A stretch of DNA of 17,864 bases. Source: Ginkgo biloba (taxonomy: Eukaryota; Plantae; Ginkgophyta). The notes under the pieces were generated by a model. The model was not told where the DNA came from and did no database searches. It saw nothing but the letters and a program-made list of their open reading frames with translations. Within the stretch, counting starts at the first letter, position 1, and the number at the start of each line of letters is the position of its first letter. This document shows, one piece after another, positions 4,507 through 17,864 of this stretch. Location of the stretch: contig JANKJI020000004.1 in NCBI GenBank assembly GCA_024626585.2, forward strand, positions 159,375,482 through 159,393,345. The letters run 5' to 3'. Made by a program: the position numbers and the translations under genes.

Positions 4507-4612
4507 TCACTGGGACCTTATGAATATCACCAAACTTGAATAGAATCCAGTGATAGCAATAAGAGATGTCCCAATGTACATACAAGCTGTGGTTGCACAT
4601 ACATACAAGTAT
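4507..4612 (-). CDS. PIGG: PIG-G terminal exon (YLYVCATTACMYIGTSLIAITGFYSSLVIFIRSQ*)
   Basis: Acceptor TCTTGCAG|A completes the Lys codon, giving the conserved FSPK-YLYVCAT junction. TGA at 4509-4507. Not in the ORF track. Confidence 0.9.
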
Positions 4613-7600
4613 CTGCAAGATCATTAAAAAAATGCTATGGATTGTGTTGCACGATCTTAAAATTTGTTTAGTTCCCACAATATGATCGCGAATAGGAGGG
4701 TCATAATAGTTGATTGAAGGAAGATGGCAGTCTAGGCATGTGATCAAGGGCTGCGATTTATCATGATCAGGAGATCATGGAGCAGAGATCACACAGTTAA
4801 CCGTCAAACATACATACATTTTTGCAGAGACATCATGGGACACAATGGTCCTTAGTTGAATCTGGAGACTTCAGTCTTAGCATGAGGAGATTTGAATAAT
4901 TGATTAGTGATAATACATGTGCAAGAACAATTATGATTGTTGGTATTTACCAGATGATTTGGACGTTCTTGAGGGTGATAGCATTTGACAGCATGGTGGT
5001 TGCTTTGTTGAAGGCTTGCTAAGCAAAAGGGCAATTGAGGGAACATCTTTGTATAGCCTAGAAAAGACAAGTAAGACTTATCTCGAAATCTGTGAATAAA
5101 GATGAGTAGTGAAGCCAGTGCCTTGTCAATTGACTCACCAAAAGGATCAGCGAGCAGAAAGAAAGAAATAGTATTACTGTTCTCTGATGACCAAAAGCAG
5201 TCAATGGGACTATAAATACTACATCATGTAAGATAATCTGTGCGTGTGCAAGAGTGGCAACCCCTCATCTAAGCCTAATGTTAGACCTATCCCTATCTTA
5301 AAGTCCTTAAAAAATAGGTATCATTNNNNNNNNNNNNNNAGGCAAATAGGCAACCTTGCACTCAACATGAGAATCCAAGAAAACCCTAAAGGGGGGCAAT
5401 GTGCAATATATGACAATGTAGGATTTCCTGCGTGAGTACCTCCCTCCAGGGAATGGGGATATCCAATTGTCATAGGAGTATGCATCGCTCTGAGCCCATG
5501 CCTCATCCACAAGATATACCACTCAATGACTATGTCATAGATCCAAGAGCAGAAGATGATCCAATCCCATCTGTCCTAACATCCAAGGCCGAGGAAGTGG
5601 TGTTCACGAAGAAAATAACTAGTGATCTGTCTATCAGGTAGNNNNNNNNNNNNNNNNNNNNNNNNNNNNNNNNNNNNNNNNNNNNNNNNNNNNNNNNNNN
5701 NNNNNNNNNNNNNNNNNNNNNNNNNNNNNNNNNNNNNNNNNTTCTCCTCTTCATTGTAATGATGTCACTGAAAATATTTTGTACTACCATAGTCAGTTGA
5801 TATTGTATGAATGGCATTTCCATTATTATGAACTGATGGAAAGGAGGAAGTAGAGTTTGACAAAGCTAGCTTGGGAATCTTGTCAATTCTTTGCAATCTT
5901 TTTTCATACTACAAGCACACGTTAATTGTTGCCTACAAGGTGTCTCAAAGAATTTCCTTAATTTTGACTTTATAATTAGGGTGAGTTGATTATAATAGTA
6001 AACAAGGCATCCTGCATCCTTCTGGATATGTGAAGATGAAATAGTGTACTTTAATGTAATGAATCTAGCTGTAAAGACCTTAAAAAACTCGCGAGGGAGT
6101 TGCTTCATATTGGTAAGGCTTTATGTACGTCACCAGGGTTGATCTTGATGGCCGACTATTTCGTTAAGGTAGTGCTCAAATCATCCTATGATGAGATCGA
6201 TTAAGAGGGTAATGACCAATACCACTTGACGCAATCACTTGTAGGAGTTTGGTAGAACAATCACATTGTGACCTATTATGAGGAAACCCCGAGGTGGAAC
6301 AGGCTTCTAAGTAAGAATGTATATGATCATTCAAGCTTCCATCTACTTTGCTAGAATATTTAGGTAGTGGGATCAAGTTGGCAGGTAATGGGACTAGTTG
6401 CACATCATGCCAGAGTGGATTAGGGGCTACCTAAGGAGTTTCCATGACTGGGTGATGTTCACACCTAGTTTGATTTGGTAGTTAATTTGTAGATTCTAGA
6501 GTGAGTCCCTTTGAGAAGAAATTATTTTGACATTGATAAGAAAGATATCTAACTTTCAATTGTTAATATGCTGAGCACAGACTGTGTACGTATAGATGTG
6601 AATGCATATGTACATGCATGTGCTTGTGTACACACATTATTACTTACTTTGGCGAGAATACACTCCAAACAAATAGATGATTCTTCATGGTCAATAATAT
6701 GCCTGTGAAGCCAACCAGCACAACTGAATTCAATGCCAATGGCAAAACACATGGAAGGGCAATTATCTGCAGAAAGAAGTATCCTGAATTTTCTTCGTCT
6801 TTAATAGCATGCATGAAGTTGCTGCACTCCTTGAAAGATGAACAAAGCAGCAAGGCCAGCAGAAATAGCAATGGAGATGCATATGTAATAATGAAAGCCA
6901 AGATGCCCGATAAAACTGTTGAGTGGCTTGATAGTCCCTGCCATACGGAATGATTGATGAAGAAAAGGTTCTCAAACATAGCAGTACGGGAAAATTGCAT
7001 TCGAAAAATACAAACAATGACGGATACAATGATTCAAGAGAACAAAAATACTTACTGTGTATGCACCTGCCACATCAACTGTGGCTAGCGTATTGCTGTT
7101 TCCAAGTCCAAAATGGCCTGCTGCCTTGGAAGCGTAAGCTTCTCTTAATAAGGGAATTTGACACTCTCCTTATAGAATACACAACTTGTCATTTATGTAC
7201 AATAGACCTTCTTGAAGAGAAAATTCCATTTTCTTATCCCCTTACTATAATACTACCANNNNNNNNNNNNNNNNNNNNNNNNNNNNNNNNNNNNNNNNNN
7301 NNNNNNNNNNNNNNNNNNNNNNNNNNNNNNNNNNNNNNNNNNNNNNNNNNNNNNNNNNAATTTCAAAAAGCAACTATGCCTTATAATGCAACGATTTTGA
7401 ATTGTAGATAAACCTTTATTGCATTTTACTTACATATCTTCTACAGGAATGCCCCTTCTTGCCCAAGAGTCATATACATTTGAGATCGTCAAATAGCCTA
7501 GAGCTTTGAATTAAAGCTTTGACACTTTGTAGATGATCATCAAATTCTTCTATAAGGAACATATGCGCCTTTCCATTTGTCTTTTCATAGTTCAACATGC

Positions 7601-10600
7601 TTCCCACATATTCATTATTCCAACACTAGAGATAAGATTTGTTTCCTAGCATCTATAATCAGATTCTAGATCATTGATCTTTCTTGACAAATTGTTTGTG
7701 GTTTTCAAACTATGTTTGATTATAAGGTAGAAAATATTTATCAATAAGAATCCTTTTCCATTATTGGTTCCTCTGTTATAACAATTCCCATAGTTTTCAA
7801 AGAAACTCGAGTCTTTGTGATCTTTTGCCACATAAACAACATGAAGTAACCCCCTGGATATTCTTTATCTTTCAACAAGTAGCAAGTATAAATTGATAAC
7901 AAGTTTTTAAATATTTTTTTGGGGAATTCATAGCATAGAGATCAACTTATTAGGCTTGATTGTGAATCATTTTTATTGCATGGGCCAACTTGTCTAAGAG
8001 TTTATTATGTCCTTCAAATCTTGTTATTGTGATGTGCCATTTAGTTCTCCTTGATTGACCCCTAATCCACCCTTAGGTGCTGATATGCCGCCTCCCTAAA
8101 AATAGATGCAAATGAGCTCAATTTGAATTGTAATTTTCATGTTGCATTTATATACATGTCTGATTTGCAAGCCAAGGTGTCAGCCACAAAAGCTCTTCTC
8201 AATGGTGCACAAGTGTGCCCAAAAGTTTGTACCCAAGGCATACCATGAGGTAAGTTCAACTCTATTGATGTTGTCATTGATCTAGAGCATTCAAATTTTA
8301 ATTTCTAGTAAGTTGGCTTCTAGAATGCATATTGGATATTTTTTTGGAAGATCTCTCCCTGAGACTGTACTCAAAGACTAGGTTGAGGAAAGTTGGTAGA
8401 TAAATAGTGGGAAAATTGTTTCTATTCATTATCTATGCAGAGGATTTTNNNNNNNNNNNNNNNNNNNNNNNNNNNNNNNNNNNNNNNNNNNNNNNNNNNN
8501 NNNNNNNNNNNNNNNNNNNNNNNNNNNNNNNNNNNNNNNNNNNNNNNNATCTCCAATATAAAGATAGTTAGGTGACTCTTCAATTCTAGACAATGACCCT
8601 TAACATTCAACTTCCTAACCTTTTGAATTCTCCACAGACCCTTAAACTAAAATATTTAAACCATGGTCTATACAGAGAGGTATCATGCCCATAGTCAATG
8701 CCATTAAAAAGCTCAGGGGCGCCAAAATACACGAGATCTTAAACGAGGGTTTGAACAAACAATATAACTCCCACGACCATAAATGAAGTCGCCCTATTAG
8801 AAAACCATTAAACCCTACCCCTTTTTTGTCTTTCTTCACTCTACATAGTATGCTAGCATTCTTCACTCTACATAGTTGGTAACAAGACAAACTACCTATG
8901 GTTCCATAGCAGGTGCAATCTTTTTTTTGATTTTTTTGCAAACTCAACGATAAATCCACCAATAGTAGATCTTCAATCACAAATGTCTTTAACTAAAATT
9001 CAGTTGCAAATACCTCTATAACATCCATAGGATTTAAAACATAGAGGTAACTTTTAAAACTGCTTGTACTACACAACCTCTAAAATTGATATAAGAATAA
9101 AACAACTACTAGGTCACAAAAATCCACTCACAAACTCAGGTTAGGGATAACTAGGATTTTGATCTATTCATGACTATATAAATACATGTTCAACAGAGAT
9201 GACCTAATCCAAGCGAGAAAGGCTAACTTGGATGATCCTGAGTAGTCCATTGATCTAACAACTCAAGCAGCGTGAAGACGACTCAAGGCATTGGAGGTGA
9301 CTCAATCCAAATGGAAATACTTCCATGAATGAACTCTAGAACACGAGCCAATCAAGGTGATGCAAGTTGACCTAAAGAAATGTGAATTGACCTACTTTTT
9401 CCCCCTTGAGCTGCCCAGTGTTTTTCTTGAGACTATTTTCATGAGATGCTTTCCCTAAGATGTTCTTCCCTTAGAATGTAAGCCAAATATAAAGGAGCGT
9501 AGATTTATCAATTGAGTCGATCAAAACTCCAAATCGACAGTGTTGTCTAATTATGGCTCTAAGTGTTAGAATCCACACTAATAAGAGGTGAAGTATGCAT
9601 TCATAGTGTGAGGGCATGCATTTAGTACACACTCATAACAAAAGGTAGAATAACATCATAAAATCATTGCACAAATCACAAAGTACTCAAATTTGGGGTA
9701 CAAACTTCTATTATTAATTTCAAGTGTGCTAGTACAACATAATAAATGCACGGGTTAGGCTTCTCACACCAAACCTTAGTTTTTATTACTTGAATCACAC
9801 CAAAGGACTTTGTCTCTTCAATTTATAGTTTCTCTCTCTTCATAAATGGTAAGGACATGTCTTTTCTAAATGTGGGTTATAATATTAACCCTAACCCTAC
9901 TATTTTGTCCTTTCTAATTTTACATTAGATGCGCCCTCATTAGGGCATTAAATACGACCTTACATGAATAATAAATGCACCTTAATTAAGCCCTAATTAA
10001 TTTGACTTAGGGCTAGGCAGATTGACGTCATAATTGTCCTTAAATCTGTCGACTTTGACGATGCTAACTCGATTTAATTGTTCCTTAATGACTTTGCTTT
10101 GACCAAAATTGACCCCACCTAATTGTTCGTTAATAAGTTTGGTTTGACCAACGTTGACCCGACTTAATTACTCCTTAAATAGGTCATCTTTGACTACGAT
10201 TTTGACCATTAATAATGCACCTTAAATTCAGGTTGATTTTTATCATTTTGACCAACAACTTGAACATTAAATATTATCCTTTTTTTTGTGACTTTGACCA
10301 AGTTTGACTAGCAAATTTCTCAGCATTAAATGCTATTATTATTTTGGGTCTTTCACTAGCAACTTTGGCTACTTTTGGCCAATGATTTTGACCAAGTTTG
10401 ACGAGCATTGACTTTAGATTTTTAGGGTTGACGTCATCCCACAATTAATTCTAGCTAACATCCTTCTCGCTTCTGCCATGTTAACATTGACTTCATCACA
10501 TCATCTAGGTCTTGCCACATCATCAAGGTCTAATCCTCGTGATCTTGCCATGTTATCTGAGCACTTTTAACTACCTTAAGGCAGTTTTGCCTTTCCAAGG

Positions 10601-13600
10601 TGGTTTTGTCCTAACTTAAGGTGGTTTCTCCTTCTGCTCATGACATGCCCTTTGTGGATGTCACGTCGTCGTCTATTATTTGCAAATGAATCATGTCGTC
10701 AGTTTGCTATATCAATTAGGGACAAATATCCTACAAACACTATAAAGCCTCCAAATCAAAAGGTGCCTCAGTACTATGTCAAAGTCTTTCCAGAAGTCTC
10801 CAAAGTAGTAGTCAAACTTATAGTGCCTATGTCTAGACCCCTTAATTGTATCCCTATGTGTAAGAATATGATCAAGGGTCTGATGGTCTCATCGAAAACC
10901 TACTAACTCTTTTCTCTGAGGCCCTCTCTGTCTACTAGCTATGAGATATGTGAGTCTAGGATGGTGGAGTGTAATTGGTCAAGGTATGGTTGATCATAAT
11001 GGTATGATATTTTCGTGGATTTGATGCATTCCCTGATTTGAAGATTGGTTGTATTATGTTTGAGATCCAAGAGGTGGAGAAATCAACCACGCTCAAGGGT
11101 ACTAATTCAGGAATAAAACAACATCAATGATAATTCTTTCAACATACTTGAGCAAGGACACTCGAGCCTAACATGGAGGGGATCGATGTTAGCCATAAAA
11201 TGGTTGTGTTATAACCTTATATTAATTTTAATATTAATTGTGTAAAATGACATGAACTAATAGTATGTAATTAGGCTTAAGGGGTTAATTAAGGATTAGT
11301 TAGTAGTTAACTACGAACACANNNNNNNNNNNNNNNNNNNNNNNNNNNNNNNNNNNNNNNNNNNNNNNNNNNNNNNNNNNNNNNNNNNNNNNNNNNNNNN
11401 NNNNNNNNNNNNNNNNNNNNNCACTTGTATCTTGTTGCTAATTCTTATAATGTTTTTAGTAGTGTTGAGTGTGTGATGCAATGCTTCTATTAGACATTGA
11501 TGTGCTTATGAAGGTAATTGCATTTATTGTTACCTATTTTCTTATTTTGTCTGACAGTCCACAAGGGAAGCCCCCAAAAAATTGGAGAGACAAATTAAGT
11601 TGGAGATTAGCTTTGCTAGAGAGTTAATCACTTTGAACAAAGATGTGGGATGATTGGAGAATGACAATATGAATCNNNNNNNNNNNNNNNNNNNNNNNNN
11701 NNNNNNNNNNNNNNNNNNNNNNNNNNNNNNNNNNNNNNNNNNNNNNNNNNNNNNNNNNNNNNNNNNNNNNNNNNNCAAAGTATCACCACTTTCTTGGAAG
11801 GTAAGTTACATCTTCACTTCCTTAAGAAGGAGATTCCTACAAGCCTTATATCATCCTAAATAAGTTTTCCACTATCTTTGATCATCCAGTTATCCCCTAG
11901 GGTTACTCCCTTCCACTTTAAAGAAGATACAAATAGTTCTTCATATTCAACCTGTAACCAATTCTAGAAGGTTTTAGCCATTGGGAATTTCTAGAATACA
12001 TGGAAGACCAATTCCTTCTTTTGACATACAACACAAGAAGGGTCCGCCAAGCTTGAATTATGTAGTCAATCTTTCACCGCAAGGTTGTGGTGTATCACCA
12101 ACCATCCCAAAACATTAATATTGAATTATTTTTGTACCTTCCATATGCTTCGACATCTCTTTTTCCATCTTTCCTTTGGGTTGTTGATTCCCCATTTTAG
12201 ATTGAGTCGAGGAGCACTAAGTGTCTCACATCTAGTTATATTATACAAATGACGATTTTTGTAGCAGTAAAAGGGATTCCCATTGCTCCATCTCTAATCC
12301 CTCCAATATATTCCTGGAACCTATAATTGGCGCTTGAAAATGCAACTCTCTGGGAGAACTTTACAAAGCTCCAATAAGATAGGCTCATTTGTATAGGACA
12401 AATTTAAAGAGTATCTGATGGCTCTCCAATCTTTCCATGTCTGATGATCTTGATCCCAAAGGTCCTTCTAGAAGAACATCCCCTTTCTTTCTAATCTTTT
12501 TCCTATAAGATTTGGAATCATACCCAACAATCCTCTAGATGAAGAAAAAGTCCAAATAGGCCTTGAGGCTAAATCCCAACCATTCCTTAACCCTTCAAAA
12601 TCAGAGTGCAGTTGTGTAGAAATTGATTGCCAAGATTTCCACACACACTTGAGGATTTAAGACCCTGTTGTTGTGAATGCAGATGCCCCACCTAGAATGT
12701 CATATAAACCAAATGGGCCTTTGATTCACATCTAATAAGTTGTTGTAGCAATCTTGTGACAAACAAGGATCTACTATGGTGTATCCCCATGTTTACAACG
12801 AACCATCCATTTTCCTACCAAGACCATTCCTTGAGCCCTAATGTCAGTTATACCCAAGCCACCATGGGTCTTGGGAAGAGTGCATATGTCCCAAGCAACT
12901 AAGGTTCGGCCCTTGGCTCCTCCATGTTTTCCCCACAGAAATTTTTGTAACAACATGTCAATTTTGATGTAACCAGATTTGGATGGAAAGAGACAGGATG
13001 ACTAATATATATGCCCAGATGCAAGAATCCTGTCAACCATTGTGATCTTCCCTGCCAAAGGAAGGTCCTTAATATCCATCTTTGAATCTTGGCCAATAAT
13101 TTATCCAATTTTTTCTTTTCCGTTTTTATGGTAGTTTTTTATTTTTTTCAAAAAAGAGTTAAAAAAATAAAAGAAAAGAAAAGAAACGGCATTTTGGGGG
13201 TAGGATATGGTTGGGATACGACCATCAACCATATCCATACAGGGTACAGTACGGGTACAACACAAGTATGTACCATAAATGTTTTCAAGCTATTTCTGCG
13301 CCACTCCCATCCCTTCAGAAATCTCAGATATGGATAGCTTCCCTTTTTATAACTACTTGTAGCCGGTTGGCAAGGAACATTTCACTCCAAAATGGAGCTG
13401 ACTTTGAGGCATTCAAGAGGAAATGGAAGAAGCCACACACTGTCAACTCTGCAACAGCAGACAAGAGTCAAAGAGTACAGCTTCTCCAGAAAATGGCAAG
13501 CAATTCAAGAGAGTAGACTTGAGGAACTCTGAATTCTCTGCAAATTGCAGTACTCGGCTTTACTGTTTAGACTACAGCAAAAGGACCATTTTGTTTCAAA

Positions 13601-16329
13601 ATCCTTCTAGCATGCTGCTATAATTGGAGAAGTTGTAAGCCGGAAGGCATGGCCTATTTTGTCTTTGTTGGACTCTGTTCCATTATCAATCAAAGCTGTT
13701 ATTTGTGTTCCCAAACAAAGTTTGAACTGAGTGATTTCTAATGAGGTGATTTTGGTTTTTGCTCCTGCGTGAAGCTCTTAATGTGCATGTAAGGAGAAAG
13801 CAAGCTTGCCTGCAGCAAGTGCATCGAGTTTAGCTTAAATTATTTCTAAACAGCAATTTAATTAAGAGCAAAATCTTATACTCATTTTCTGTTAGGGGCA
13901 TCTCCTGTCTCACATTTCATCAAGATAAAGAAACATCTTTTGCACATTAGGTGTGAAACAAAATGGATCAGGTGAAACAAAAATTCATGCAACTATGATA
14001 TCCTTACATGCTTGAAGACTACCTATTTTTATATGGTCAATCAGCCTATCTACCAGTCAAAGCTTGTATATGCTTTGGGAGGCTTAAAGAAAATAAGGAT
14101 GGTGTGATTAGGTGCATGCATAACTAGGTAGCCAGAGAGGGATTAGATTACTGACCATAATCCATCCTTTATGTTGTGTCCCAGCATTATAAAAGTAGCT
14201 CGTCATTGCGAGAATTTGTACGAGAAGAAGGACAACAGGTCCTGCATTTACTGGCTGTTGAAGTAGCAGCTGCAAAAGGCACCAGCACAATATGTATACC
14301 TTTCCGGCAAAATAAATGCAGCTTCTTGTTCCCTCTTCAAGATGAAGTTTTCCAACCTGACTTTTAGAATCTGTCCGATTTTTTTTTTCTGGCAAGTTTA
14401 TAGTCCAAGGAAAAGCTAACAGTGTTGTCAATGCAGTTAAACCAAGAGATACATATACTAGGCGGGCCAATAAAGTTACCCAATAATCCATTAAAGGCAT
14501 GATTTGGTTCTGGCACCACAGAATGTAAATTAATATTAAAAAACCAGACATTAAGATATTTGTAACAATAAAAACTTGGAAACGCTTCCTTGGTTTAACT
14601 GCCAGAAAAGCACCCACTGCTATAAACATTACTAGGAAAACTGAGGCTGTCTGGAAACATTTTATGACATGAGGACCAGTGTTATCAAGCCACTTTGCAA
14701 TATCTGGCAAATAGGCCCAATTAACACCACCTTGATGCCATGCTCTCAACAGTCTTCCAGCAATAAGGACAATCAAAACAGCAGAGATCTGTAAAGCGTT
14801 AATTTGATGGGAAAGTATAGATGCTCCAGATTTATAGCTCAATCTGGAAATACTGTTTAGATTGTTCAACTCACCGCAAGGACTTTGAAAGGAAAAATTC
14901 TCTCTTGCTTTCGATAAATCCTGTGACCAGAAAAACAATTTAAATTTTTGCTTGGGTGAAGAACTCCAAATTTGACAAGTTCTATGAATAAAAGCAAGGC
15001 ACAAAGTTGACAATAGGAAGTGCCACGTAAATTGCTCTTCTTCCACCAAGGAACTAGCTCCCAGGCTAAGTGCATGGATGCAAATCCCTGCACAAGCTAT
15101 TCCACTCTCAAGATGTACAGTGTGACTGACACCCTCCACCCTTAATGCAACGCATTCCGATATTTCCCCAATTGCTTTGCACACTTGGAATGAAATCCAG
15201 AAAAGTGTCAACAGGGACCCAATCATCAAGAACCCTCCCATTGCGAGTAAATGCAACGGCTTCTGCAGCACAAACAATGCATTAGTTTCATGTTACTACA
15301 CCATGATATTTTTCAAATGAAAGCACAAAATATGCAAACAATCACTGATATACTATGCTAAGGAATACCAGGACACACGTAGGTGCATACTGAATGAATG
15401 GACATGTTGCCATACCTCAGTAGCTCCCCTTGATAACCATTCTGATGCAGCTCTTAAGAACTCAGTATAAGCTTCCATTGCAATTTGTGAGTTTTCCACA
15501 TGTTTGATTGGATCTCCACTGCATGCCATGTAGAAACTTGACATTGAATTCTATCATATAGTAGCTACCCATTTCTGAATACTGTGAAGTTGAATTCAGT
15601 TCTTGAAAAGTTTATGGCAGAAACCAAGGCAGAAAATAAAGCTTACATTCCTCTACTTCTGTGTTGGAGTTTCCAAGAAATATGAAGAGAAGCAGCTTTC
15701 CCAAATAAATAGCATAGTTTTGCATCACTTCGTAGAGTGCCTATTTCACTTTCCAACATTTTATCATGGATTTCCTTACCCTGTTCCAGAGATGCCATGT
15801 TGGCACATGCTGGTAGAACACTGACGAACGTAAAGTGATTGGGTTTGATGTCAGTTTGCTGCATTTGGTGAAACAATGCCAACGCCTCATTGGCAAACCC
15901 ATACCTGGAGTAAGCTGCAATCATCACAGTCCATGAGAACACATTTCGTTTATGCATGTCGTTGAAAACCCTGCGAGCATCCAGCAAACTCCCGAATTTG
16001 ACATACATGTGCACCAATGTGTTCCCTAAATATCTGTCTGGCATAAATCCTCGTAGATTGATGTGGGTGTGGACTAATTTACCCTCTGACAACGCTTTCT
16101 TATTAATGCAGACCTGCAAGAGACTAACATATGTAGAAATTCCTACAGACCGGTCCATAACATGCAAAATGTGCAGCGCCTCCTTCAGTCTGCCCTGCAA
16201 ACATAGACTTCTCACATCCTTGGGGTATCCGCAGTTGCCGATGCCTTGGTTTTCAAGAGCACCAGCCGTAGTCTTAGCTGTGCCTTCTGTACGCTGAAGC
16301 TGGGGTATTAGGCCAAGAAGCGATACCAT
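4507..16329 (-). CDS. PIGG: Spliced gene model: PLS-PPR N-terminus fused to the C-terminal membrane half of GPI ethanolamine-phosphate transferase 2 (PIG-G/GPI7); join(16329-15647,15518-15416,15262-14156,7124-7056,6937-6648,4612-4507), 2358 nt, 785 aa
   Basis: All five introns are GT..AG with matching phases (2,0,0,0,2) and the exons have no internal stops. Motifs match plant PIG-G as I recall it: FLRAASEWLS..TEKP, SLGASSLVEEEQFTWHFL, GRLLRAWHQGGVNW, AGHFGLGNSNTLATVDVAGAY, MKNHLFVWSVFSPKYLYVCAT. PIG-G identity is secure. The 5' fusion and the 7124 acceptor are less certain. Confidence 0.7.
5866..6410 (-). mobile_element. Ty3/Gypsy gag relic (retrotransposon gag domain) in the last intron
   Basis: PLPKYSSKVDGSLNDHIHSYLEAC, then frameshifted LFYQTPTSDCVKWYWSLPS*SISS*DDLSTTL and MKQLPREFFKVFTARF. 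Confidence 0.8.
6648..6937 (-). CDS. PIGG: PIG-G exon (GLSSHSTVLSGILAFIITYASP...MKNHLFVWSVFSPK)
   Basis: Acceptor TGGCAG|GGA and donor AA|GTAAGT (phase 2). The HLFVWSVFSPK motif is typical of the PIG-G/PIG-O C-terminus. Confidence 0.93.
7056..7124 (-). CDS. PIGG: PIG-G exon (AAGHFGLGNSNTLATVDVAGAYT), apparently missing its first several codons
   Basis: Not in the ORF track; read by hand. Signature GNSN.LAT.DV.GAY and donor ACA|GTAAGT at 7056/7055. The only phase-0 AG at the junction is a weak AAG|GCA lying in Gypsy-derived sequence. Confidence 0.85.
7125..7258 (-). mobile_element. Ty3/Gypsy integrase zinc-binding-domain fragment abutting the PIG-G exon
   Basis: 7226-7125 translates EFSLQEGLLYINDKLCIL*GECQIPLLREAYASK, which fits the Gypsy pattern .LQDGLLY...LCVP.....LIREAH.S..AGHFG. 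Confidence 0.75.
7475..7610 (-). mobile_element. Possible decayed Gypsy gag fragment
   Basis: WEAC*TMKRQMERR / YVPY / ALIQSSRLFDD resembles W..MK..M..R.VP / L.QGS.SV.DY. Frameshifted and weak. Confidence 0.35.
8711..8724 (-). other. Possible LTR-retrotransposon primer-binding site (TGGCGCCC)
   Basis: The minus strand reads TTTTGGCGCCCCTG next to LTR-like non-coding sequence (8728 to ~9500). TGGCGCC is a common Gypsy PBS start, but the expected CA LTR end reads TA here. Confidence 0.3.
9564..10735 (-). mobile_element. Probable solo LTR (~1.17 kb)
   Basis: The minus strand reads TGTAGGA...TCTAACA (TG..CA, imperfect inverted ends), with a repeat-rich U3-like part and TATA-like CTATAAA at ~9828-9822. 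Its start coincides with the break in the LINE RT. No clean TSD, and the left end could instead be 9541. Confidence 0.5.
10002..10492 (+). repeat. Degenerate ~45-bp minisatellite with about 17 same-strand TTGAC motifs
   Basis: TTGAC at 10002, 10022, 10055, 10099, 10109, 10144, 10154, 10190, 10202, 10248, 10294, 10304, 10388, 10398, 10408, 10428 and 10487. Confidence 0.8.
10736..11090 (-). mobile_element. Non-LTR retrotransposon reverse transcriptase relic (N-terminal RT motifs)
   Basis: SWISNIIQPIFKSGNASNPRKYHTIMI, then GFR*DHQTLDHILT..DFWKDFDIVLRHLLIWRL, a decayed form of W....I.PI.K.G....NYR.I / QxGFR...T.DHI / DF.KAFD.V. Confidence 0.8.
11776..13108 (-). mobile_element. L1-clade LINE ORF2 relic (post-RT region and zf-RVT zinc finger), intronic
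   Basis: LAGKITMVDRIL, KFLWG..LVAWDICTLPKTHGGLGITD..KWMVR, and WLVIHHNLAVKD*L..DPSCVVCQKKELVFHVF. Contains frameshifts and stops. Confidence 0.88.
13110..13345. mobile_element. Possible non-autonomous DNA transposon end (hAT/MITE-like subterminal GGTAC repeats)
   Basis: GGGTAGGATATGGTTGGGATACG..GGGTACAGTACGGGTACAACACAAGTATGTACC looks like CpG-decayed (G)GGTACG repeats. It follows a T-rich/A-rich tract at which the LINE ends. No TIR pair or TSD found. Confidence 0.35.
14156..15262 (-). CDS. PIGG: PIG-G large exon, 369 codons, multiple transmembrane segments
   Basis: Acceptor TTTGTGCTGCAG|AAG and donor ATG|GTCAGT. Motifs SSLVEEEQFTWHFL, GRLLRAWHQGGVNW, WCLLQLLLQQPVNA. Confidence 0.93.
15416..15518 (-). 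CDS. PIGG: PIG-G exon (GDPIKHVENSQIAMEAYTEFLRAASEWLSRGATE)
   Basis: Acceptor TGCAG|T at 15519/15518 completes the phase-2 codon ATT. Donor GAG|GTATG at 15416/15415. Conserved AY..FL..ASEWL motif. Confidence 0.88.
15647..15745 (-). CDS. PIGG: 3' part of an internal PIG-G exon, in frame with the PPR fragment
   Basis: DAKLCYLFGKAASLHISWK resembles the plant PIG-G linker (L.CLF.NAA.LH..WK) that precedes AY..FL..ASEWL. It ends at donor AT|GTAAGC (intron starts 15646, phase 2). The 5' limit is approximate. Confidence 0.75.
15760..16329 (-). CDS. PLS-class pentatricopeptide repeat protein N-terminal fragment (L-S-P motifs plus a truncated L motif)
   Basis: DVRSLCLQGRLKEALHIL leader, then STYVSLLQVC..PDR (L), YLGNTLVHMYVKFGSLLDARRVFNDMHKRNV (S), FSWTVMIAAYSRYGFANEALALFHQMQQTDIKPNH (P), FTFVSVLPACANMASLEQGKEIH (L, cut short). 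ATG context is good (ATAATGG). No E/DYW domain. Confidence 0.93.
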
Positions 16330-16732
16330 TATTTCTTCTGATTCCTTAATTTTTTTTTTTTTTTNNNNNNNNNNNNNNNNNNNNNNNNNNNNNNNNNNNN
16401 NNNNNNNNNNNNNNNNNNNNNNNNNNNNNNNNNNNNNNNNNNNNNNNNNNNNNNNNNNNNNNNNCTGTATTTATCAGATTCATCTCATGCATTGAAGCTG
16501 AAATAACAAAAGCGCAGGGAGCAAAACTATGTTATACAGCCAACAGGAGGACAAAGTGATTAGTCACCATAAAAGGACTAAACAGCAGTAACCAGGAATG
16601 TTTATTTGGGCATAAGAGGGAATGTTACATGGCCTCATTTTTCCTAGTAATGTGGGCATAACAGGGAATGTTTATTTCCCTTTCACATTTTTAATGCTAC
16701 TGCACATTATGGCTTAAAGATTGTTACCTTGT

Positions 16733-16827: not shown

Positions 16828-17229
16828 GATTAAGGAAACAGAGAGTATATATTATGTGTAGTGTAACACTATGATAATTGCCCATAGAAGGAATCCACCT
16901 TTTGCATCATCCCATGCTAGCCCATCCCTCACTAGCAGACTAATCTCTCAACCAACCACTTCCATGACATGTTAAATTGTCAATAGAAGATGGAACTTCT
17001 GTGTATCACTGTATGCCTAAGGACAGAGAGCAGGAGAATAAAAGGCTGCAAGTTTGCACTGCCCTGTGAATACCAAGAACTACTTTGCTCTACTGTTCTT
17101 TTCAAAGGTTTGTAAATTATTCTTTTGTACACAATTTATTTTTCCATTGAAGCTATCTATATTTCACATCAATATAATACACTTTCCATCAGATGCCTTG
17201 GACAACATGCTCTTTAGTCATTGTCCATA

Positions 17230-17864
17230 TTATTTTCATCAATTACTACATCTTTGCTAATAATCACTTTATTTTATTTTAGAATGTAGATTTTATATTA
17301 TTTATTTTACTCATCATATCCAACCATTATTCTTTTTTTACTAACCTCTTCTAATTTGTTACTCTTTTCTTTAAGAACCATTGCATAATAGGTGGATCCA
17401 AAAATTCTTAAGTGTCAAACTTTTGGATTTATACTTGTCCAAGATTTGAAAGGTGTGTTTCCCTTGAATGTTACTGTAGGATATCTATTTATCAAATAAA
17501 TAGCTATATTAACTACATATATGAAAAATTTCCTCTCCATCTATTTTTTCTCCAACATAGATCTTGCCATTCCTATCAAAGTTTTGTTGATTGTCTTAGC
17601 TACACCATTTTTTTGCAGTGTAAAAGAATTTGTCAGTTTTCTTCAAATTCCACATGCTCTACAAAATATTTGGAACTTAAATGATGTAAATTCTCCTCCA
17701 TTATCTATTATTAAAGTTTATATTTTGTATCCTACCTCATTTTCAACTAAGGCTTTGAAAATCTTGAAGAAGTTCAATGCCTCTAATTTTTTTTTCAAAA
17801 AGTATCCCTAGAACATTTTGGACCAATCATCAACAAAAGTGAGTAAGTATCATGGTCCTCCCAA
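17230..17864 (-). mobile_element. Ty1/Copia pol relic: integrase core and downstream SH3-like region, several stop codons
   Basis: Hand translation: YLLTFVDDWSK..YFLKKKLEALNFFKIFKALVENE..DNGGEFTS..QKNGVAKTINKTLIGMARSML..YLINRYPT..HLRIFGS..VGYDE..VIISKDVVIDE. Runs off the window end. Confidence 0.92.

What the first reader, a model, noticed from the sequence alone, without database searches (positions are those of the whole stretch)
4507..16329. In-frame chimera: PLS-PPR RNA-binding N-terminus fused to the membrane half of PIG-G
Seen: the 228-aa ORF is PPR up to EQGKEIH (His188, 15768-15766) and PIG-G-like from about DAKLCYLF (15726). There is no gap, stop or pyrimidine-rich acceptor between the two parts. 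The apparent stop (ATG TAA) overlaps a GTAAGC donor that splices in phase to five more PIG-G exons, giving 785 aa. Known: PLS-PPRs are soluble organellar RNA-binding/editing factors, while PIG-G is an ER polytopic enzyme whose N-terminal half holds the catalytic alkaline-phosphatase-fold domain. I know of no described PPR::PIG-G architecture. Inference: a young exon-shuffled gene that could tether about 3.5 PPR motifs to a membrane, or a disrupted PIG-G copy, or a misassembly.
Basis: partly seen in the sequence, partly recalled or inferred. Interest (0 to 1): 0.85.

Follow-up and report, generated by a model that had tools for sequence, protein, structure and literature searches.

The report
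Misassembled Ginkgo PIG-G gene
The apparent fusion of an RNA-binding protein to a membrane enzyme is most likely the ordinary Ginkgo PIG-G gene, joined by the genome assembly to unrelated high-copy DNA at short look-alike stretches, so it is probably not a real new gene.

Summary
The open reading frame and the 785-aa model exist as described, but the fusion is most likely an assembly misjoin (about 0.82). The PIG-G exons match Ginkgo's intact 1008-aa PIG-G model Gb_02601 at 589 of 591 residues, with two conservative changes. The switch is not at DAKLCYLF. It lies 34 codons inside exon 12, at KEIH, which both the PPR repeat and PIG-G encode. The same gene has a second switch: ten codons inside exon 15, Gypsy integrase gives way to PIG-G at a shared GHFG. 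The natural acceptor and ten conserved codons are missing there, so the 785-aa model needs a weak acceptor inside retroelement DNA. Both switches go from a high-copy family into a low-copy exon, 587 and 138 bp from a contig end. Introns are retained and there is no decay. The scan noted similar chimeras on other DNA of this genome, two of them with PPR; I did not check those. A real rearranged copy (0.13) or a working chimera (0.03) is therefore not excluded.

The parts
15766..16329 (-). 5' fragment of a PLS-class PPR gene: N-terminal leader, degenerate first motif, then L1, S1, P1 and two thirds of a second L1, ending in EQGKEIH
   Evidence: Pfam PPR hits; 53-59% identity to the best PPR hits, with similarity ending near residue 190-194; motif classes assigned by length and by eye
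15766..15777 (-). Junction 1: KEIH, shared in frame by the PPR repeat (GKEIH) and PIG-G (NKEIH, Gb 400-403)
15647..15777 (-). 3' part of PIG-G exon 12 (Gb 400-443); the first 34 codons of the exon are missing
   Evidence: 43/43 identical to Gb_02601; exon limits projected from Amborella
15416..15518 (-). PIG-G exon 13
   Evidence: 33/34 identical, A472S
14156..15262 (-). PIG-G exon 14
   Evidence: 368/369 identical, Y555F
7107..7258 (-). Decayed Ty3/Gypsy integrase (H2C2 region) fragment with a stop codon, running to the contig end
   Evidence: Atlas hits to Integrase_H2C2 clusters; matches the motif of fetched retroelement loci, one of which has rve downstream
7107..7120 (-). Junction 2: GHFG shared in frame by Gypsy integrase (AGHFGVGK) and PIG-G (SGHFGLGN)
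7056..7118 (-). 3' part of PIG-G exon 15 (Gb 857-877); the natural acceptor and Gb 847-856 are missing
   Evidence: 20/20 identical over Gb 857-876; missing peptide not found in the window
6648..6937 (-). PIG-G exon 16
   Evidence: 97/97 identical
4507..4612 (-). PIG-G exon 17 with stop codon
   Evidence: no differences from Gb_02601
16365..16464 (.). 100-N gap bounding the contig that holds junction 1 (587 bp away)
7259..7358 (.). 100-N gap bounding the contig that holds junction 2 (138 bp away)

Best explanation
The window holds exons 12-17 of the ordinary Ginkgo PIG-G gene (GPI ethanolamine-phosphate transferase 2). In a fragmented assembly, two contigs that carry its exons were extended upstream into the wrong sequence. 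Where an exon shares a short stretch with a high-copy family (a PPR gene at KEIH, a Gypsy integrase at GHFG), the assembler crossed from one to the other, went on for 587 and 138 bp, and stopped. A shared peptide gives shared codons, so the joins are in frame automatically. Shown: near-identity to an intact PIG-G, both joins mid-exon at shared motifs, both near contig ends, missing exon parts absent from the window. Inferred: that the joins were made in silico (or in library preparation), and by what step.
For: 589/591 residues identical to the full-length Gb_02601, which has the catalytic Phosphodiest domain. Both changes occur in other PIG-G proteins (S in 92/111, F in 3/111), so there is no sign of decay. 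KEIHDKM ranks 2 of 1002 PIG-G 7-mers for similarity to 17 PPR proteins. Seven of 10 fetched Gypsy-like loci continue GHFG with VGK, against LGN in PIG-G, beyond the pattern used to fetch them. Both joins are mid-exon by the Amborella gene structure. Introns are retained, which excludes an mRNA-derived origin. Nine gaps in 17.9 kb. No PPR family is listed on any PIG-G hit. Many similar chimeras are noted in this genome (unchecked AI notes).
Against: The DNA of both parents is not in hand, so the exact shared length is unknown; I can only bound it at 12 nt or more for junction 1 and about 12-14 nt or more for junction 2. That may be shorter than the overlap most assemblers need. The Gypsy rank is circular, because the loci were fetched with a GHFG pattern. 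An earlier follow-up judged another chimera in this genome to be real retroelement cargo (s1-585802; not checked).
Confidence: 0.82

Rival explanations
1. The joins are real but the product is dead: a very recent duplicate or a damaged allele of PIG-G, made by two microhomology-mediated deletions or repairs, one into a PPR gene and one into a Gypsy element in intron 14.
For: Microhomology-mediated end joining makes joins at short shared stretches and keeps introns (general knowledge). Junction 1 lies inside an ungapped contig. Two amino-acid differences from Gb_02601 could mark a separate copy.
Against: It needs two independent events within 9 kb of one gene copy, each ending near a contig end, with no stop, frameshift or splice-site damage elsewhere. 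Two conservative differences also fit ordinary alleles. A fresh Gypsy insertion would start at an LTR end and leave the 5' exon part nearby; neither is seen.
Confidence: 0.13
2. A real, expressed PPR::PIG-G chimera: about 3.7 PPR motifs anchored to a membrane by the catalytically empty PIG-G half, binding RNA there or competing with PIG-G for partners.
For: Open frame with ATG, intact PPR motifs and canonical GT-AG sites; 785 aa is possible on paper.
Against: The model needs a purine-rich acceptor inside Gypsy DNA and loses Gb 847-856, a segment present in all 111 aligned PIG-G proteins (G854 in 110). The exact ORF is in no collection searched, and no hit covers both halves (limited to 125-399 aa). 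So few PPR motifs would give little sequence specificity (general knowledge).
Confidence: 0.03
3. Retrotransposon cargo: PPR and PIG-G pieces joined by template switching during reverse transcription, as reported for maize Bs1 and noted elsewhere in this genome.
For: Template switching uses short homologies; a Gypsy fragment and a copia-like fragment are nearby; s1-585802 describes such a case.
Against: All PIG-G introns from 12 to 16 are present with working splice sites, and the exons are undecayed and spread over 11 kb.
Confidence: 0.02

Closest known systems
Ginkgo biloba Gb_02601 (PIG-G / GPI ethanolamine phosphate transferase 2; P0222)
   Same: Residues 400-846 and 857-1008 match at all but two positions; intron positions agree with Amborella.
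   Different: Residues 1-399 (first membrane anchor and catalytic domain) and 847-856 are absent from the window and replaced by PPR and Gypsy sequence.
PLS-class PPR proteins of gymnosperms (e.g. Gb_38243, Gb_20682, P0079)
   Same: L-S-P motif pattern, 40-59% identity over the repeat region.
   Different: Stops inside the second L motif; no further repeats and no E or DYW domain. The exact parent gene was not found.
Ty3/Gypsy integrase H2C2 region (PF17921)
   Same: REAHTSKVAGHFG-type motif and upstream context.
   Different: Only about 45 codons, with a stop; switches to PIG-G at GHFG.
Chimeric contigs of short-read assemblies
   Same: Unrelated sequences joined through shared short words; described for graphs linked by shared k-mers (PMC7299287, written about metagenomes).
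   Different: The assembler and its settings for this genome are unknown to me; the shared length could not be measured.

Membership tests
PIG-G (the window's exons as part of a normal gene) | PIGO_PIGG membrane region with PIG-G-type best hits | tested here: met
PIG-G (the window's exons as part of a normal gene) | N-terminal anchor and alkaline-phosphatase-fold catalytic domain | tested here: not met
   No hit for any of exons 1-11 or the 5' part of exon 12 in the window; present in Gb_02601. DNA beyond the window could not be read.
PIG-G (the window's exons as part of a normal gene) | Conserved intron positions | tested here: met
   introns after Gb 443, 477, 846, 877, 974 as in Amborella
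PLS-class PPR editing factor | P-L-S motif triplets | tested here: met
PLS-class PPR editing factor | Long motif array ending in E/E+/DYW | tested here: not met
   the array ends at H188
Exon-shuffled chimeric gene | Parts joined through an intron in matching phase | tested here: not met
   join is 34 codons inside exon 12
Exon-shuffled chimeric gene | Junction supported by genomic reads and transcripts | not testable with these tools
Retroelement-captured gene cargo | Captured pieces lack introns and lie between LTRs | tested here: not met
   introns 12-16 retained; LTRs not searched for
Assembly misjoin | Switch at a short shared sequence, near a contig end | tested here: met
   (peptide level; nucleotide length only bounded)
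Assembly misjoin | An independent model of the same species shows the gene intact | tested here: met
   Gb_02601; a predicted protein, its DNA not on record
Assembly misjoin | No spanning reads; loose read ends at the join | not testable with these tools

The most novel reading that the evidence does not exclude
A very young, real duplicate of the PIG-G 3' half was joined by microhomology to a PPR gene's 5' end and is transcribed, giving a membrane-anchored PPR protein with no described counterpart.
Probability: 0.03. Interest if true: 0.6.

Novelty: not a real feature. Interest (0 to 1): 0.06.

Why it matters
If the best reading holds, it matters only as a warning: in this assembly, gap-free in-frame fusions at a shared motif are weak evidence, and similar chimeras noted elsewhere in the genome should be checked against Gb proteins and reads first. 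If the chimera were real and expressed, it would be a newborn gene caught before any divergence, coupling an organellar RNA-binding fold to an ER membrane scaffold.

Tried and rejected
The message did not say human-like and told me to go on with other tools, so translations of 14111-16329 were afterwards sent by reference to protein tools; the DNA is Ginkgo. The joined 785-aa model was not sent to any search tool; it was built only inside a script for local comparison, and pieces were searched apart. Exact look-ups of the 228-aa ORF found nothing. The parent PPR was not found; sees only 125-399 aa proteins, so this blank says nothing. DNA for Gb_02601 is not on record, so synonymous differences could not be counted. 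The Cryptomeria locus was too long to fetch. Pfam gave no integrase hit on the two short Gypsy pieces; the Atlas and fetched loci did. I guessed a SPAdes plus Zanfona assembly from the 100-N gaps, but the paper searches did not tie this genome to it, so I do not claim it. No paper describing a PPR::PIG-G protein came up (narrow searches). Rejected: a hidden acceptor at the junction with the PPR lying in an intron, since the join is inside exon 12; a PPR insertion splitting the exon, since the 5' exon part is not in the window. Searches were my own input errors.

Full report
Observation. The 228-aa ORF at 16329-15643 on the minus strand exists and carries PPR repeats. Downstream ORFs hit the PIGO_PIGG membrane family. 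The window has nine N gaps. The PPR part and the first three PIG-G exons lie in one ungapped contig, 11776-16364, so the fusion point is not at a gap. The six gaps named in the finding fall in introns and do not affect the frame; their continuity was not tested with reads. Joining 16329-15647, 15518-15416, 15262-14156, 7124-7056, 6937-6648 and 4612-4507 inside a script gives 785 aa with GT-AG sites and no internal stop. That joined model was not sent to any search tool; its pieces were searched apart.

Organism and parent gene. A search with a full-length relative (P0096) returned Ginkgo biloba Gb_02601, 1008 aa, with both the catalytic Phosphodiest domain and the membrane region. The window's exons match it at 589 of 591 compared residues (Gb 400-846 and 857-1008 are covered except for codons split by introns). 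The two differences, A472S and Y555F, are conservative and occur in other PIG-G proteins (92 and 3 of 111). Gb_02601 is a predicted model, but it is colinear with a 1027-aa relative encoded without introns on a 3.5-kb Logan contig and with the Amborella gene. So Ginkgo has an intact PIG-G, and these exons are either that gene or a copy too young to tell apart.

Junction 1. Identity to Gb_02601 begins at K185 (15777), not at DAKLCYLF. PIG-G reads NKEIHDKML and the window reads GKEIHDKML. GKEIH is also a common form of this PPR motif. KEIHDKM ranks second of 1002 PIG-G 7-mers for similarity to the 17 PPR proteins fetched (that set came from a query that included the motif, a mild bias). Amborella has 17 exons, and exon 12 spans about Gb 366-443, so the join is 34 codons inside an exon. 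This is not shuffling through an intron. None of Gb 1-399 is found in the window.

Junction 2. Upstream of GHFG at 7118 the window reads LLREAYASKAA where PIG-G reads VVTMHWLGMS. The upstream piece resembles Integrase_H2C2 clusters and the motif of ten fetched retroelement loci, one with an rve core downstream. Seven of the ten continue GHFG with VGK, against LGN in PIG-G, so the likeness extends past the pattern I searched with; by my count, two of these loci match the window at 18 of 22 nt across the motif. The rank of 1 is circular and is not used. Exon 15 starts at Gb 847, so this join is ten codons inside the exon. The missing peptide is not in the window and belongs to a segment present in all 111 aligned proteins. 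The 785-aa model therefore rests on an acceptor inside retroelement DNA.

How it most likely arose. Two joins in one gene share four traits: a high-copy family upstream, a low-copy exon downstream, a shared in-frame peptide, and a contig end close by (587 and 138 bp). A family with many diverged copies is likely to hold one that matches an exon for 15-20 bases where the peptides agree, and an assembler that crosses there yields an in-frame join without any selection (inference). Graphs linked by shared k-mers are a known source of chimeric contigs (PMC7299287, written about metagenomes). The shared length cannot be measured without both parents; it could reach about 21-22 nt if the parents read GKEIHDKI and AGHFGLGK, which is a guess. 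Notes on other windows of this genome list many such chimeras, including PPR::ZIP and CHR5::PPR, and one follow-up reports that a similar fusion is absent from the species' RNA (s1-603279). These are unchecked AI notes and serve as leads only.

Rivals. A real, dead rearranged copy made by microhomology-mediated repair would also keep introns (0.13), but needs two events in 9 kb with no other damage. A working chimera (0.03) must splice to a weak acceptor and lose a conserved segment. Retroelement cargo (0.02) is contradicted by the retained introns.

Limits. I could not search the rest of this assembly for the upstream PIG-G exons or a second copy; no other PIG-G note exists among the 626 noted windows. 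The assembly method is unknown.

Verdict. The sequence reads as described, but the fusion is most likely not in the plant. Novelty: not a real feature. Interest 0.06.

Noticed in passing
window 7056-7258: Second switch in the same gene: decayed Gypsy integrase into PIG-G exon 15 at a shared GHFG; natural acceptor and ten codons missing.
   Followed up: yes
window 16350-16464: The contig ends in a 15-nt A run (minus strand) next to a 100-N gap, 35 bp upstream of the PPR ATG; the promoter is not in the contig.
   Followed up: partly
window about 12000-13110 (-): Broken frames in intron 14 that look by eye like the C-terminal part of a LINE reverse transcriptase; Pfam gave no supporting hit on two short pieces.
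   Followed up: partly
window about 17200-17864 (-): Stop-riddled sequence that looks by eye like a copia integrase core, beyond the gap upstream of the PPR.
   Followed up: no
window 14156-15262: Exon 14 of the gymnosperm PIG-G proteins has an insert of about 25-30 residues relative to angiosperms, before the GRLLRAWHQGG motif.
   Followed up: no
P0301 (Kingdonia, 1315 aa): A PIG-G model with an extra PF10536 domain; may be a merged gene model.
   Followed up: no
L006 3877-4647: A metagenome contig with a Gypsy integrase also has an ORF hitting the phage-type RNA polymerase family PF00940, as seen in plant mitochondrial DNA.
   Followed up: no
P0330 locus (Cryptomeria): The Cryptomeria PIG-G gene spans about 142 kb against 16 kb in Amborella, so the Ginkgo introns here may be much longer than the 100-N gaps suggest.
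   Followed up: no
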